A stretch of DNA of 64,000 bases, taken from the IMG/VR virus record IMGVR_UViG_3300013094_000017, positions 186,001-250,000 of that record; one strand, given 5' to 3'. Positions 46,648 to 55,265 of this stretch are shown here, piece by piece. The first letter of the stretch is position 1; every line of letters begins with the position of its first letter. Made by a program: the position numbers and the translations under genes. The notes under the pieces were generated by a model, which saw only the letters and a list, made by a program, of their open reading frames with translations, had not been told where the DNA came from and did not search any database.

Positions 46648-46856
46648 TGGGAGTAGGTACGCAGGACACATCCTACTCCCCCGTCCTGCTTGTTTTGGGC
46701 TAACATAGGCCACTACCTAACCACTGATCAGAACGTGGTCGCAGGTTAACACAGGCGCGGCATCACTATGTATAGCCTCATAGGGTTTCCTATAGGAGCA
46801 ATCGATCAGCATCCTCCTAACTCTCTCCCTCTTTATGCCTGACGTTCACGGTTTAC
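46648..46856 (-). ncRNA. Candidate structured ncRNA downstream of tRNA
   Basis: No credible ORF; multiple stems and a 9-bp + 7-bp H-type pseudoknot. Confidence 0.45.
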
Positions 46857-46933
46857 TGGTGCTCCGTCAGGGATTCGAACCCTGCCTCCCACGTTATGAG
46901 CATGGTACTCTCTACCTAGTGAGTTACCAGAGC
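46857..46933 (-). tRNA. tRNA with CAU anticodon (elongator Met or Ile2)
   Basis: GCTCTGG acceptor, ACTC/GAGT D stem, CCATG-CTCATAA-CGTGG, CAGGG-TTCGAAT-CCCTG, encoded ACCA. G1-C72 pair and no 3GC anticodon stem, so not initiator-type. sigma70 promoter upstream. Confidence 0.9.
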
Positions 46934-46985
46934 AAAAACTTATACATTAATAATACTATATCTATTCAGTTTTGTCAACTGTTAG

Positions 46986-47706
46986 TGGGCCTACCTTGAC
47001 TCGAACTAAATACTATTATGAAACTAGAACTTACTCCGCAGCGTATTGCAGCTAACAAAAAGAACTGCCTACTAGGAGGAGCAGCATTTGCCGCTAAAAT
47101 GTCATCAGCATATAATGCTAATCCCAGCTATTGTAATCAATGCAGCACTATATTACCTCAGAGCAAGAAAAACAATAAATTCTGTAATTCCTCTTGTTCT
47201 GCAAAATATAGCAATGCACGCAAGGACTATTCAAAGTTCACACCAGGACCTGTTCCTAAACCTAAAGATCCTACAGCGGGGTCAGCACCCTATAGTACAT
47301 TATTCCGTTGTGAGTGTAAACATTGCGGAGTAATTAAGCTGTATCGATCTCAAACCAAGTATTGTCCTGAACACAGGGATCTTTATAGCCACGCAGGCCG
47401 AGCTAAGTATTGGTTCACATTTAACGTGTTTCATTACCCTGATCTGTTTGATCTAAACTGGGTTAACTCTGTGGGATTTCGAAGCTCTTCTAATCCCAAT
47501 GGAGTTACTAGGGATCATAAAGTAAGTGTCAATGACGCCATTCGAAACAACTATGATCCCTATTACATAAAGCACGTACTCAACTGTGAGCTAATGCTAT
47601 TCGCTGAAAATAATAAAAAGAAAACCAAGTCCTCTATCACCTATGCAGAGCTAGTCATACAAGTTAACCTGTATGATCAGTCTCTGACCAACTGAGCTAC
47701 AGGCCC
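46986..47706 (-). pseudogene. tRNA (Ile-like) split by HNH endonuclease insertion
   Basis: 5' half GGGCCTGTAGCTCAGTTGGTCAGAG (47706-47682); 3' half GTTCGAGTCAAGGTAGGCCCA (47006-46986); anticodon arm absent. Confidence 0.75.
47018..47695 (+). mobile_element. HNH homing endonuclease with N-terminal Zn fingers
   Basis: CNQC...FCNSSC, CKHC...YCPEH, TRDHKVSV...NCELMLFAENNKK; TAAATA 4 nt before ATG. Confidence 0.75.
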
Positions 47707-47716
47707 TAAAACTACA

Positions 47717-47794
47717 GTGTGAGATCCCAAAGTATCCTTATGGGACGATTTATCTATCCGCTGCGCAGTACTATGTACATCGCCAATCTCACAC
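47717..47794 (-). ncRNA. Candidate 78-nt three-way-junction RNA under perfect late promoter
   Basis: 9-bp terminal stem GTGTGAGAT/ATCTCACAC; TATAAATA 5 nt upstream. Confidence 0.5.
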
Positions 47795-47846
47795 TTCTTT
47801 ATTTATAACTCAAATGATGTTATACTACACTATATGACTTATAGTA

Positions 47847-48125
47847 TTACCTAGAATAAGTTAACTTGTTCAACAGTTCCTGCCCACAGACTCCCTCAGC
47901 AATGTCCATGAGTGCAGCCACAGTAGGTTGATGAGCATGTACTTGAGTGGGATCATTTCGCCCAGAGATTAATCTAGCAGTCTGAATCTCACGAGCTCGA
48001 ACACTGGCACCTAGAATCAAATAGAATGATTCATTGGCGAACCGCTCCATGGCAGGAGTATTATCATATACCTGCTGAACTTTTCTCACTATCTTCTTTG
48101 GTTTATATACTTTAACTTCACTCAT
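47847..48125 (-). CDS. Hypothetical protein
   Basis: AAGGA RBS. Confidence 0.6.
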   Translation of the reverse strand: MSEVKVYKPKKIVRKVQQVYDNTPAMERFANESFYLILGASVRAREIQTARLISGRNDPTQVHAHQPTVAALMDIAEGVCGQELLNKLTYSR

Positions 48126-53442: not shown

Positions 53443-53664
53443 ATGGCTTATGTTGACGTTGAAGTAGAAGTAGAGTTAGATATGTTCAGTGATAAGGAAC
53501 TTATCGAAGAATGTAAATTACGTGGAATGTCTGTTGATGGGGGTGTAGAACATTACTCTGCTCATGATGTCATCCGTGACATCTATAATGCCAAGGCCCG
53601 TGGACAAGACTACGAGCCTTTGTTACGTGATCTATTCTATCGCACACTTGGACGGGTATGCTAA
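53443..53664 (+). CDS. Hypothetical protein
   Basis: VEVELDMFSDKELIEECKLRG...LFYRTLGR. Confidence 0.65.
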   Translation: MAYVDVEVEVELDMFSDKELIEECKLRGMSVDGGVEHYSAHDVIRDIYNAKARGQDYEPLLRDLFYRTLGRVC

Positions 53665-55265
53665 CTGATATAGAAATTAATCAAGGGTACAAGCCCTTAA
53701 AGCTCTCAAAGCTGGCCTCTGGGCTAGGCATTGGGGGTAGCGTACAAGAGTGGGGGCCAAATAAGGCCAAGATAGCATTTGATGAAGTTAAGAGCCTTAC
53801 CCAGGGTAAATTGATCTTAGTCACAGCCATCACCCCCACCCCCGCAGGTGAGGGTAAGACCACAACCACCATAGGCCTAGCTGATGGGCTACGCAAATTA
53901 AACTACTCAAGCATAGTATGCCTACGTGAGCCAGCCCTGGGCCCGGTGTTTGGTATGAAGGGTGGGGCTACCGGGGGTGGTCATGCCCAGGTCTACCCTA
54001 TGGAGGATATCAACTTACACTTTACAGGTGACTTCCACGCAGTTGCCTGCGCACACAACTTACTCAGCAGTATGATTGATAATCACTTACATTGGGGCAA
54101 TGCGCTACGGTTAGACACTAGCAAGATCACATGGCGCAGAGTCAGCGAAATGAATGACCGTAGCTTACGCAGTACAGTAGTAGGGTTAGGAGCTCATAAC
54201 AGCATCACCCGTGAAGAGGGCTTTGATATAGTAGTAGCCTCTGAGGTAATGGCTATATTGTGTCTAGCTGAAGATTTCAAAGACCTAAAGAAACGTCTGG
54301 GTAAGATCACAGTTGGGTATACCTTAGATGGTAAGCCCGTTACAGCTAAACAGTTAAAGGCGCATGGGGCTATGGCAGCCTTACTTAAAGATGCTGTCAA
54401 CCCTAACCTAGTACAGACTTTAGAAGGTACCCCAGCACTAGTTCATGGCGGCCCATTTGCTAACATAGCACACGGATGTAATAGTGTTATTGCTACCAAG
54501 TTAGGTTTGAAACTTGCTGACTATGTGGTAACAGAAGCAGGCTTTGGTGCTGACCTAGGTGCTGAGAAGTTTATTAATATTAAGTGTCGTAAGAGTGGAT
54601 TACGGCCAGATGCAGTAGTCCTTGTGGCCACTGTTAGAGCAATTAAGTACTGGGGTAATTATGATAATTTGGACAAACATATGGCTAACATCAAAGGTTG
54701 GTATAACTTACCTTGTATCGTGGCTATTAATCGTTTTGCAGACGATTCTGATGAAGATATTGCTGAACTAATAGAACATTGTCGAGAAAGAGATGTTGAA
54801 GCAGTAGAGTGTACACATTTTGCAGATGGCGGGGTAGGTGCTCAAGAACTAGCACACGAAGTTGTCTTGGCCATTGACCAATCAAGCAAGCAGATGGAAT
54901 TGACCTATGCTGATGAAGATACATTATGGACTAAGATAAATCATATTGCCAAGAGAATATACGGTGCCGAAGGTGTTCATATGGATGCTAAAGTATCAGC
55001 ACAGTTAGATCTACTACAGAAACATTATGGAAAGTATCCAATCTGTATTGCCAAAACACAGAGCAGTTTCAGTGATGATCCTACAGATAAGAACTCAGCA
55101 ACAGACATACACACACTAACTGTGCGTGAGCTACGCCTGTGTACCGGAGCAGAGTTTATTGTGGCAGTATGCGGTAACATCATGACCATGCCAGGACTAC
55201 CAGAACGGCCAAACGCTGAACGTATTGGTATTGACCGACAAGGGCGTATTGAGGGATTAGACTAA
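53658..55265 (+). CDS. fhs: Formate--tetrahydrofolate ligase
   Basis: TAITPTPAGEGKTTT, LREPALGPVFGMKGGATGGG, INLHFTGDFHA, GPFANIAHGCNSV, EAGFGADLGAEKF, IMTMPGLP. Confidence 0.97.
   Translation: MLTDIEINQGYKPLKLSKLASGLGIGGSVQEWGPNKAKIAFDEVKSLTQGKLILVTAITPTPAGEGKTTTTIGLADGLRKLNYSSIVCLREPALGPVFGMKGGATGGGHAQVYPMEDINLHFTGDFHAVACAHNLLSSMIDNHLHWGNALRLDTSKITWRRVSEMNDRSLRSTVVGLGAHNSITREEGFDIVVASEVMAILCLAEDFKDLKKRLGKITVGYTLDGKPVTAKQLKAHGAMAALLKDAVNPNLVQTLEGTPALVHGGPFANIAHGCNSVIATKLGLKLADYVVTEAGFGADLGAEKFINIKCRKSGLRPDAVVLVATVRAIKYWGNYDNLDKHMANIKGWYNLPCIVAINRFADDSDEDIAELIEHCRERDVEAVECTHFADGGVGAQELAHEVVLAIDQSSKQMELTYADEDTLWTKINHIAKRIYGAEGVHMDAKVSAQLDLLQKHYGKYPICIAKTQSSFSDDPTDKNSATDIHTLTVRELRLCTGAEFIVAVCGNIMTMPGLPERPNAERIGIDRQGRIEGLD

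What the first reader, a model, noticed from the sequence alone, without database searches (positions are those of the whole stretch)
47717..47807. 78-nt three-way-junction RNA with its own perfect TATAAATA promoter, heading the tRNA locus
Seen: TATAAATA (47807-47800), 5 nt, then a 9-bp closing stem GTGTGAGAT/ATCTCACAC. It encloses a CGAT/ATCG arm and a CCCA-AAG-GATA-CTT-TGGG-type arm. It is tRNA-sized but lacks the TTCRA loop, and lies 10 nt upstream of the split tRNA. Established: T4 encodes stable non-tRNA species in its tRNA cluster. Inference: a late-expressed tRNA mimic or decoy, for example against anticodon nucleases.
Basis: partly seen in the sequence, partly recalled or inferred. Interest (0 to 1): 0.62.

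Follow-up and report, generated by a model that had tools for sequence, protein, structure and literature searches.

The report
Conserved cloverleaf RNA heading phage tRNA operon
A 78-base stretch at the head of a giant phage's tRNA genes folds into a tRNA-shaped RNA that is not a tRNA; its fold is kept in related phages by matching mutations, it belongs to no described RNA family, and its job is unknown.

Summary
The window comes from a 259-kb freshwater jumbo myophage, distantly related to PA5oct and the Rak2-like phages.

Five further versions of the element were found in metagenome contigs of related phages. They show a four-helix cloverleaf, not a three-way junction. In the alignment 92.7% of pair cells are standard pairs and 13 of 25 pairs show compensatory double changes; slid controls give 33–46%.

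ARAGORN, the Rfam tRNA model and all other Rfam families miss every version.

In the relatives the element starts 6–8 nt after a near-consensus TTGACN-17-TATAAT promoter. In the window it starts 5 nt after TATAAATA. That is the same spacing that TAAATA keeps to 10 ORF start codons (1.7 expected). The RNA therefore probably begins at the first base of the closing stem.

Some relatives lack the element.

My best guess is a stable tRNA-shaped RNA released by tRNA processing. The decoy idea is untested and nothing here supports it.

The parts
47717..47794 (-). The 78-nt cloverleaf RNA element (whole)
   Evidence: sequence. (alignment of six versions, consensus fold, pair counts). Covariance model R1 scores it 99.6 bits, and it is the only copy in the window.
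47786..47794 (-). P1 5' strand (RNA positions 1-9), pairs with 47717-47725
   Evidence: helix 1: 9 pairs, 6 with changes on both sides, 96.3% of cells paired. The stem exists in five different sequences: GUGUGAGAU, GUGUGGGAU, GUCGGGGAU, GGGGGAU and AAGCUGGAGU.
47717..47725 (-). P1 3' strand (RNA positions 70-78)
   Evidence: helix 1.
47763..47783 (-). P2 arm (positions 12-32): GCG / 2-nt internal loop / 4-bp stem with a 3-nt loop / CGC; it sits where a tRNA's D-arm would
   Evidence: The inner stem is GUAC/GUAC, GUCU/AGAC or GCUU/AAGU (3 pairs with double changes). It is broken by A.G/G.A in the L025 type, which was recovered from five independent assemblies.
47745..47761 (-). P3 arm (positions 34-50): 3-4 bp stem closing an almost invariant 9-nt loop AUNGAUAAA; it sits where a tRNA's anticodon arm would
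   Evidence: Pair 37-47 is A-U in three versions, G.U in two and G-C in one. The loop and flanks are invariant except one position.
47726..47744 (-). P4 arm (positions 51-69): CCYA/URGG stem plus 0-2 further pairs, with loop core ARGRUAN; it directly abuts the P1 3' strand, as a tRNA T-arm does
   Evidence: Pair 53-67 is C-G or U-A. The two inner pairs are only partly kept.
47800..47807 (-). TATAAATA, a T4-late-type promoter candidate; it would place +1 at G47794, the first base of P1
   Evidence: ATAAATA is the predicted late promoter of Rak2-like jumbo phages (PMC5259590). Initiation was not shown.
47819..47824 (-). TATAAC, probable relic of the sigma-70 -10 box that relatives carry (…TATAGTGTATAAT…); there is no -35 box in the window
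   Evidence: Compared by eye with L005, L029 and L025. The promoter scan finds no sigma-70-like site here.
47682..47706 (-). 5' piece of a disrupted tRNA(CAU) gene of the GGGCC type, 10 nt after the element
   Evidence: The intact orthologue lies at L005 4710-4786. ARAGORN does not call the gene in the window, even when introns are allowed.

Best explanation
The element is a structured non-coding RNA, 78 nt long, made of four helices around a four-way junction in the same order as a tRNA cloverleaf. It forms the very 5' end of the primary transcript of the phage's tRNA operon.

Transcription starts at or within 1-2 nt of the first base of the closing stem. In relatives it starts from a host-type sigma-70 promoter; in this genome it starts from a T4-late-type TATAAATA box.

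In three of the five lineage types (this window, L029/L031 and L037) a tRNA gene follows after only about 10-20 nt. The element therefore sits where the first tRNA of a multi-tRNA precursor would sit.

I infer that it is released as a discrete, stable species of roughly 80-90 nt. RNase P would cut at the 5' end of the next tRNA, and 3' exonucleases would trim back to the stem.

I also infer that it acts in trans, through its nearly invariant loops (AUNGAUAAA and ARGRUAN), by binding a protein or RNA partner that is not yet known.

Shown: conservation, covariation, strand, promoter geometry, and that it is not a tRNA or any Rfam family. Inferred: the start site, the processing, the stability and action in trans.
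For: Structure:
- Six distinct versions align without gaps.
- RNAalifold predicts the cloverleaf without guidance; 12 of its 25 pairs show compensatory changes.
- My own structure gives 92.7% paired cells, 13 pairs and 24 cells with double changes, 0/500 shuffles as high, and slid controls of 33-46%.
- The consensus is the minimum-energy fold, or close to it, in five of the six versions.

Strand: 139/144 pair cells are standard on the minus strand, against 126/144 on the other strand.

Selection: the loops and junctions are invariant over 12-21-nt blocks, while all four helices carry compensatory changes. Element identity is 67-82%, against 57-73% for the 60-nt flanks.

Promoter:
- Relatives carry TTGACT/TTGACA-17-TATAAT ending 6-8 nt before P1.
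- The window carries TATAAATA, 5 nt, then G1.
- TAAATA-N5-ATG occurs 10 times against 1.7 expected.
- The promoter type changed while the start point stayed the same, which argues that the 5' end at P1 matters.

Independence from the neighbouring tRNA: in the window the adjacent tRNA gene is destroyed, yet the element keeps every pair and has the top model score, 99.6 bits.

Placement like a tRNA: the spacer to the next tRNA is 10 nt in the window and about 11-20 nt in L029 and L037. This compares with the 1-10 nt gaps within T4's tRNA runs.
Against: - No transcript data exist, so the start, the end and the stability are all inferred.
- There are only six versions from about five lineages, and they look mosaic. 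The window and L029 share a 95% identical upstream gene but only a 71% identical element. The number of independent compensatory events is therefore small.
- In L005 and L025 a conserved 29-codon ORF lies between the element and the tRNA, so there the element would be a 5' UTR.
- In the window the downstream tRNA is broken, so the proposed RNase P cut has no obvious substrate there.
- Two groups of relatives lack the element. L013 has nothing in its place. L008 and L022 have a short 5' hairpin instead. So the element is dispensable, and a simple 5' hairpin may do part of its job.
Confidence: 0.5

Rival explanations
1. It is a cis-acting 5'-terminal structure. A base-paired 5' end, with no single-stranded overhang, would shield the tRNA-operon transcript from 5'-end-dependent decay (RppH and RNase E), or would set how the leader is processed. 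On this view it is not a functional RNA in its own right.
For: In every version P1 starts at or within 1-2 nt of the predicted +1. Relatives without the cloverleaf (L008, L022) begin their leader at the same distance from TATAAT with a small hairpin, GGGC-NNNN-GCCC. In L005 and L025 the element is the 5' UTR of a small ORF. That a 5'-terminal stem-loop can stabilise E. coli mRNAs (ompA type) is from my own knowledge.
Against: A protective hairpin does not need 78 nt, four helices or invariant loops of 9 and 7 nt. The L013 type manages with no leader structure at all. In the window nothing useful follows the element for about 650 nt, only a broken tRNA and the antisense of an ORF, yet the element is intact.
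Confidence: 0.25
2. One reading: it is a tRNA mimic or decoy that soaks up host tRNA-directed defence nucleases (anticodon nucleases of the PrrC, RloC or VapC type, or PARIS or retron effectors) or other tRNA-binding factors.
For: The four-way junction has tRNA-like arm order and size. The last arm abuts the closing stem as a T-arm abuts the acceptor stem. It lies in a tRNA cluster. Model R1 gives its only weak outside matches to true tRNAs (T4 tRNA-Gln 11 bits, GAP32 tRNA-Leu 10.7 bits); these scores show a compatible shape, not homology.
Against: - There is no anticodon-like arm. The P3 stem is 3-4 bp, its loop is 9 nt, and the position matching U33 is the one variable base.
- There is no T-loop, no D-loop GG, and no conserved discriminator or CCA.
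- The Rfam tRNA model and ARAGORN miss all six versions.
- No defence or counter-defence gene was seen next to it.
- It is absent from close relatives.
Confidence: 0.08
3. It is a cis-regulatory sensor (a riboswitch or a protein-binding leader) that controls the downstream small ORF or the tRNAs.
For: It is a compact multi-helix junction with invariant unpaired nucleotides at the 5' end of a transcript, which is what an aptamer looks like. A small ORF follows it in L005 and L025.
Against: There is no conserved expression platform. What follows differs between versions: a tRNA after 10-20 nt in some, about 60 nt and an ORF in others. No terminator or Shine-Dalgarno-sequestering helix is shared. 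No Rfam riboswitch or ribozyme matches at E up to 1-10.
Confidence: 0.07
4. It is a decayed tRNA pseudogene or a chance inverted repeat with no function.
For: Phage tRNA clusters hold pseudogenes, and one lies 10 nt away. The element is missing from some relatives.
Against: All four helices keep pairing through changes on both sides, and long blocks are invariant. A decaying pseudogene loses pairs, as the neighbouring tRNA remnant has.
Confidence: 0.03

Closest known systems
T4 small stable RNAs, species 1 (rnaC) and species 2 (rnaD)
   Same: They are non-tRNA structured RNAs encoded in a phage tRNA gene cluster, on the tRNA strand, with no known function. A homing-endonuclease gene sits in the same cluster (segB in T4; a putative endonuclease ORF here).
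   Different: The T4 RNAs are 139 and 119 nt and lie at the 3' end of the cluster, after tRNA-Arg. This element is 78 nt and lies at the 5' end. Model R1 finds nothing at rnaC or rnaD. The positional counterpart of rnaC/rnaD here is the separate ~208-nt block at 46649-46856.
Transfer RNA, including the non-canonical 8/4 and 9/3 'allo-tRNAs' (PMC5389517)
   Same: Cloverleaf order of four helices, about 78 nt, a 2-nt link after the closing stem, and a last arm contiguous with the closing stem. The closing stem is long (9-10 bp) and the last stem short (4-6 bp), which recalls the lengthened acceptor and shortened T-stem of allo-tRNAs. Some allo-tRNAs occur in phage tRNA clusters.
   Different: It has no 7-nt anticodon loop, no T-loop or D-loop signature, no long variable arm and no conserved CCA or discriminator. 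ARAGORN and the Rfam tRNA and tRNA-Sec models do not detect it.
tRNA-like processing elements (plant mitochondrial t-elements, PMC1920247; mascRNA-type 3'-end signals)
   Same: They are tRNA-shaped but are not adaptors. They sit in a longer transcript whose ends are defined by tRNA-processing enzymes.
   Different: Those elements keep enough tRNA features to be RNase P or RNase Z substrates, and they act at internal or 3' positions. Here the element is at the transcript's 5' end, so RNase P has no leader to remove. Rfam's mascRNA model hits only the true tRNA.
5'-terminal stabiliser stem-loops (ompA-type leaders)
   Same: The helix begins at the transcript's first nucleotide.
   Different: Stabilisers are simple hairpins without sequence constraints. 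This element is a four-helix junction with invariant loops.

Membership tests
tRNA (Rfam RF00005 / ARAGORN) | Detected by the tRNA covariance model or by ARAGORN | tested here: not met
   E up to 10; ARAGORN down to -ps60, with introns and in mitochondrial mode; five related versions. The only calls are the true tRNAs nearby.
tRNA (Rfam RF00005 / ARAGORN) | Four-helix cloverleaf with the last arm contiguous with the 3' strand of the closing stem | tested here: met
tRNA (Rfam RF00005 / ARAGORN) | 5-bp anticodon stem with a 7-nt loop and U33; T-loop TTCRA; D-loop GG; discriminator plus CCA | tested here: not met
   Alignment. The P3 stem is 3-4 bp with the 9-nt loop AUNGAUAAA. The P4 loop is ARGRUAN. 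The P2 loop is 3 nt. The 3' flank is not conserved.
allo-tRNA (8/4, 9/3) | 12-bp acceptor branch, long variable arm, normal anticodon loop (PMC5389517) | tested here: not met
   P1 plus P4 total 13-16 bp. There is no variable arm and no 7-nt anticodon loop.
T4 rnaC / rnaD stable RNAs | Sequence or structure similarity to the T4 species | tested here: not met
   R1 was searched over T4 68.5-74.5 kb with filters off. There was no match at rnaC or rnaD; the best match, 11 bits, falls on tRNA-Gln.
T4 rnaC / rnaD stable RNAs | Accumulates as a discrete stable RNA cut from the tRNA precursor | not testable with these tools
   No RNA data are available for this uncultured phage.
T4-type late promoter | TATAAATA box with the start about 6 nt after its last A | tested here: met
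   TATAAATA, 5 nt, then G1. The same spacing to ATG occurs at 10 ORFs against 1.7 expected. ATAAATA is the most enriched 7-mer upstream of ORFs and is the predicted late motif of Rak2-like phages. This is a motif match only.
T4-type late promoter | A gp55-type late sigma in the genome, and late timing of the transcript | not tested
   Only 64 kb of the 259-kb genome was in hand. CBB, a distant relative, has a gp55-like gene (PMC5259590).
Any Rfam 15 family (riboswitches, ribozymes, sRNAs) | Match at the gathering score, or at least E up to 1-10 | tested here: not met
5'-terminal stabiliser hairpin | Helix starts within 0-2 nt of +1 | tested here: inconclusive
   The promoter geometry in all six versions predicts this, but no start site has been mapped.

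The most novel reading that the evidence does not exclude
The cloverleaf is the founding member of a new class of phage-encoded tRNA-shaped RNAs. On this reading it is made as the first 'gene' of a tRNA operon and released by the host's tRNA-processing enzymes. It then binds a specific host or phage factor through its two GAUA-containing loops. Candidate partners are a tRNA-handling enzyme, a tRNA-directed defence nuclease, or the RNA polymerase, given the omega-like gene next door. That would make it a trans-acting regulator or counter-defence RNA rather than an adaptor.
Probability: 0.15. Interest if true: 0.8.

Novelty: new variant of a known kind. Interest (0 to 1): 0.55.

Why it matters
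Stable non-tRNA RNAs in phage tRNA clusters have been known in T4 for decades, and their function is still unknown. This is a second, unrelated example. Its fold is clean and supported by covariation, its predicted 5' end is precise, and natural variants exist with it, without it, or with a simple hairpin in its place. That makes the question testable.

The locus also shows a promoter of one class replaced by another while the start point stays the same. And it adds a candidate family to the catalogue of structured RNAs of uncultured jumbo phages. If the RNA proves to bind a tRNA-handling or defence factor, it would tie into current work on phage tRNAs as counter-defence tools.

Tried and rejected
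- Rfam at gathering and E-value thresholds, on the window and on seven related loci: only tRNAs.
- ARAGORN at default and very low thresholds, with introns and in mitochondrial mode: nothing credible on the element.
- BLAST of the locus against 50,697 phage records, near and distant modes: no match to the element. The only matches were the tRNA-Met and part of the antisense ORF.
- tblastn of the upstream 92-aa protein against the same phage records: no match.
- Four IMG/VR pattern scans: they returned only the source contig and a 99.9% identical one, plus two chance hits in one scan.
- One JGI metagenome scan: the source contig and one other with an identical element.
- One GTDB genome scan with the 19-nt core pattern: 50 hits. 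I estimate about 70 by chance. All score 24 bits or less with model R1, against 86-100 bits for true members.
- R1 on the T4 tRNA region, PA5oct 6-24 kb (which holds its two abundant ncRNAs) and the GAP32 tRNA region: nothing.
- The minimum-energy pairing GAU/AUC for the third arm: rejected by eye on the alignment, because it is broken in L029 and L031, whereas the CGR/YCG register covaries.
- An intrinsic-terminator reading of P1 plus the U-rich trailer: rejected. The U-rich trailer is seen only in the window, and the scan calls no terminator there.
- Tertiary or trans pairing partners for the conserved loops: I looked only by eye and found nothing convincing.

Full report
**1. What the window is**

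The window is an exact piece of IMG/VR contig IMGVR_UViG_3300013094_000017, which is 259,419 bp long. A 99.9% identical contig and a Trout Bog Lake contig carry the same locus.

The window encodes a T4-type large terminase, a 1112-aa tail sheath, a DnaB-like helicase and a formate-tetrahydrofolate ligase. The terminase is 55% identical to that of the Pseudomonas jumbo phage PA5oct, and less to Atu_ph07 and other giants. This is therefore an uncultured freshwater jumbo myophage on the distant T4 / Rak2-like branch.

**2. The observation**

Read on the minus strand, the locus runs as follows:
- The stop codon of a 92-aa gene at 47847.
- TATAAATA at 47807-47800.
- AAGAA.
- GTGTGAGAT at 47794-47786.
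- 60 nt.
- ATCTCACAC at 47725-47717.
- A 10-nt spacer.
- GGGCCTGTAGCTCAGTTGGTCAGAG, the start of a tRNA gene, from 47706.

The 78-mer folds at -24.8 kcal/mol, with z = -2.7. ARAGORN and Rfam find only one tRNA in the region, tRNA-Met at 46857-46933. Lowering ARAGORN's thresholds or allowing introns gives nothing credible on the element.

**3. Finding relatives**

Neither the phage collection nor IMG/VR pattern scans gave diverged copies. The route that worked went through the upstream 92-aa protein, which is a weak match to RNA polymerase Rpb6/omega (21.4 bits, below Pfam's cut-off).

That protein has eight related clusters at 44-76% identity in the large protein collection. The contigs that encode these clusters and their members were fetched.

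Downstream of that gene, five further distinct versions of the element turned up:
- L005 type.
- L025 type, recovered identically from five assemblies.
- L029 type.
- L031 type.
- L037 type.

Two groups of relatives lack the element:
- The L013 type goes straight from the gene to a sigma-70 promoter and a tRNA-Met.
- The L008 and L022 types have, at the same spot, a short leader that begins with the hairpin GGGC-NNNN-GCCC.

**4. The fold**

The six versions align over the 78 nt without a single gap. RNAalifold, given no guidance, returns four helices:

| Helix | Positions | Features |
|---|---|---|
| P1 | 1-9 / 70-78, plus one more pair in some versions | closing stem |
| P2 | 12-14 / 30-32 and 17-20 / 24-27 | 3-nt loop |
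| P3 | 34-37 / 47-50 | 9-nt loop |
| P4 | 51-54 / 66-69 | two more pairs in some versions |

Counting pairs on my own version of this fold gave:
- 92.7% of 150 cells form standard pairs.
- 13 of 25 pairs, and 24 cells, show changes on both sides.
- No shuffle in 500 reaches these values.
- Sliding the 3' partners by 1-3 columns drops pairing to 33-46%, with 0-3 compensatory pairs.

Evidence helix by helix:
- P1 exists in five different sequences, all paired.
- The P2 inner stem is GUAC/GUAC, GUCU/AGAC or GCUU/AAGU.
- P3 pair 37-47 is A-U in three versions, G.U in two and G-C in one.
- P4 pair 53-67 is C-G or U-A.

The consensus is the minimum-energy fold, or nearly so, for five of the six versions. 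G.U pairs make the minus strand the better strand: 139/144 cells are standard there, against 126/144 on the other strand.

The unpaired parts are the most conserved. Positions 41-52 (GAUAAAYCGUCC) and 30-36 are nearly invariant.

The element as a whole is 67-82% identical between versions, about as conserved as the protein gene beside it. The 60-nt flanks align at 57-73%.

Caveats: there are only six versions from about five lineages, and the locus is mosaic. The window and L029 share a 95% identical gene but only a 71% identical element.

**5. Shape compared with tRNA**

The helix order resembles a tRNA cloverleaf: closing stem, 2 nt, arm, 1-2 nt, arm, 0-1 nt, then an arm that abuts the closing stem. 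The length is also right.

None of the tRNA signatures is present. There is no 7-nt anticodon loop and no U33 equivalent; the corresponding base is the one variable loop position. There is no T-loop, no D-loop GG, and no conserved discriminator or CCA.

The long closing stem with a short last stem recalls the 8/4 and 9/3 allo-tRNAs (PMC5389517). Those, however, have a long variable arm and normal loops.

A covariance model built from the six versions (R1) behaves as follows:
- It scores the six versions at 86-100 bits.
- It finds no second copy in the window.
- It finds nothing in T4's tRNA region, in PA5oct 6-24 kb, in GAP32's tRNA region, or in 50 chance pattern hits from GTDB genomes.
- Its only faint outside matches, about 11 bits, are true tRNAs. 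This reflects a shared outline, not kinship.

**6. Promoter and 5' end**

In every relative the element is preceded by TTGACT or TTGACA, 17 nt, then TATAAT, ending 6-8 nt before the first paired base (the scan of L037 scores 11/12). PA5oct, which relies on host RNA polymerase, uses the same TTGAC and TATAATA boxes (PMC7318152).

The window has lost the -35 box and keeps only a damaged -10 relic (TATAAC, 47824-47819). No sigma-70-like site is called there. Instead, TATAAATA sits 5 nt before G1.

Is TATAAATA a promoter in this phage? The evidence is mixed but mostly positive:
- The exact 8-mer is not enriched: 4 found, 6 expected.
- ATAAATA is the most enriched 7-mer within 100 nt upstream of ORFs, at 12.9-fold.
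- TAAATA followed by exactly 5 nt and ATG occurs 10 times against 1.7 expected, and no shuffle in 100 reaches 10. Many of these are at starts of long ORFs, including the terminase.
- In the Rak2-like phages CBB and GAP32, ATAAATA upstream of structural genes is the predicted late promoter, and CBB has a gp55-like sigma (PMC5259590).
- From my own knowledge, the T4 late box puts +1 six bases after its last A. Here that base is G47794.

Two different promoter classes therefore place the predicted start at the same base, the foot of P1. That is the strongest hint that the 5' end matters. No start site has been measured.

**7. Context**

The tRNA piece 10 nt downstream is the 5' 25 nt of a tRNA(CAU) of the GGGCC type. 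By my reading it resembles tRNA-Ile2. It is intact in L005, L022 and L037/L041.

In the window a 225-aa ORF on the opposite strand (47018-47695) replaces the body of that tRNA. A decayed 3' piece remains at about 47010-46986. About the ORF:
- It matches phrog_23051, which has no assigned function, and no Pfam family significantly.
- By eye it has CxxC pairs and an H-N-H-like motif.
- It has its own TAAATA-N5-ATG.
- Its GAP32 homologue also sits antisense against a tRNA-Met gene.
- CBB is reported to have an HNH homing endonuclease at the end of a tRNA gene.

Further downstream in the window lie:
- A sigma-70-type promoter, TTGACA-17-TATTAT, at 46978-46950.
- The intact tRNA-Met.
- A ~208-nt non-coding block (46856-46649), found in eight distinct versions with compensatory stems, ending in a GC-rich hairpin. 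No Rfam family matches it.

This block, not the 78-mer, sits where T4 has rnaD and rnaC, after the last tRNA.

In L005, L008, L022 and L025 a conserved 29-codon hydrophobic ORF (MDNYQLFW…) lies between the leader and the tRNA.

**8. What it most likely does**

Shown:
- It is a selected RNA structure on the tRNA strand.
- It lies at the predicted 5' end of the operon transcript.
- It is not a tRNA and not a member of any Rfam family.
- It is accessory, because some relatives lack it.

Inferred:
- In the window, L029/L031 and L037 types it occupies the slot of the first tRNA in a multi-tRNA precursor, with a 10- to about 20-nt spacer.
- The host enzymes that free the next tRNA would therefore also free it, as an RNA of about 80-90 nt with fully paired ends, which should be stable.
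- Its invariant loops, two of which share a GAUA/GRUA core, suggest a specific partner.

The main rival is a purely cis role as a 5' protective or processing structure. The hairpin that replaces it in L008 and L022 favours this rival. The element's size, its invariant loops and its survival next to a dead tRNA argue against it.

The decoy idea stays possible, but no feature examined here supports it.

**9. Novelty**

The general kind is known from T4: non-tRNA stable RNAs in phage tRNA clusters, of unknown function. This element differs in sequence, fold and position, and it has no family in Rfam 15. I rate it a new variant of a known kind and of moderate interest. The fold is solid; the function is open.

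Noticed in passing
window 46649-46856 (minus strand); also L005 4787-4995, L008 1439-1642, L022 1430-1639, L025 709-917, L030 815-1022, L045 2953-3162, L046 1595-1804: A ~208-nt conserved non-coding block starts right after the CCA of the last tRNA of the operon. It occurs in eight distinct versions with compensatory stems (for example UUAGGAGG/CUCCUAUA, UUCGGGGG/CCCCGAUA, UUGUGAGG/CUCACA). It ends in a GC-rich hairpin with no U tract. No Rfam match. It is the positional counterpart of T4 rnaD/rnaC, and it looks like a second new structured RNA.
   Followed up: partly
window 2639, 8576, 13364, 26425, 30553, 47007, 58281, 61762, 62456 (+) and 33020 (-): TAAATA, exactly 5 nt, then ATG occurs 10 times against 1.7 expected, many of them at starts of long ORFs (including the terminase), with no room for a Shine-Dalgarno sequence. 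If TAAATA is the late promoter with T4-like geometry, these late mRNAs would start at the AUG, that is, be leaderless.
   Followed up: partly
window 47018-47695 (+), with tRNA remnants at 47682-47706 and about 46986-47010 (-): A 225-aa ORF (phrog_23051; CxxC pairs and an H-N-H-like motif by eye; no significant Pfam hit) lies antisense inside a tRNA(CAU) gene that is intact in relatives. Its GAP32 homologue (GAP32_407) likewise overlaps the 3' end of a tRNA-Met gene on the opposite strand. It is probably a homing endonuclease that targets tRNA genes.
   Followed up: partly
window 47847-48125 (-): A 92-aa protein gives a weak match to RNA polymerase Rpb6/omega (Pfam 21.4 bits, below the cut-off; JGI names its relatives 'subunit K/omega'). 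It is conserved next to the RNA operon in all relatives and absent from the 50,697 deposited phage genomes by tblastn.
   Followed up: partly
L005 4618-4707, L008 1070-1159, L022 1147-1236, L025 532-621 (absent from the window): A conserved 29-codon hydrophobic ORF (MDNYQLFWL…) lies between the leader RNA and the tRNA. A hairpin that covaries precedes it, just before its ribosome-binding site.
   Followed up: no
window 46950-46978 (-): A near-consensus sigma-70-type promoter (TTGACA-17-TATTAT) lies directly upstream of the intact tRNA-Met. It is conserved in L008 and L013, so in the window this tRNA and the 208-nt RNA have a start independent of the cloverleaf.
   Followed up: partly
window 53658-55265 (+): A full-length formate-tetrahydrofolate ligase gene (Pfam FTHFS, 757 bits) is carried by the phage and conserved in relatives (L005 and others). 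It is an auxiliary one-carbon metabolism gene.
   Followed up: no
L025, L045-L048, element positions 19-20 / 24-25: In this lineage the inner P2 stem carries tandem A.G/G.A mismatches. Its 3' half is identical to the L037 type and its 5' half is close to the window type, which suggests a recombinant. The same sequence was recovered in five assemblies, so it is not an assembly error.
   Followed up: partly
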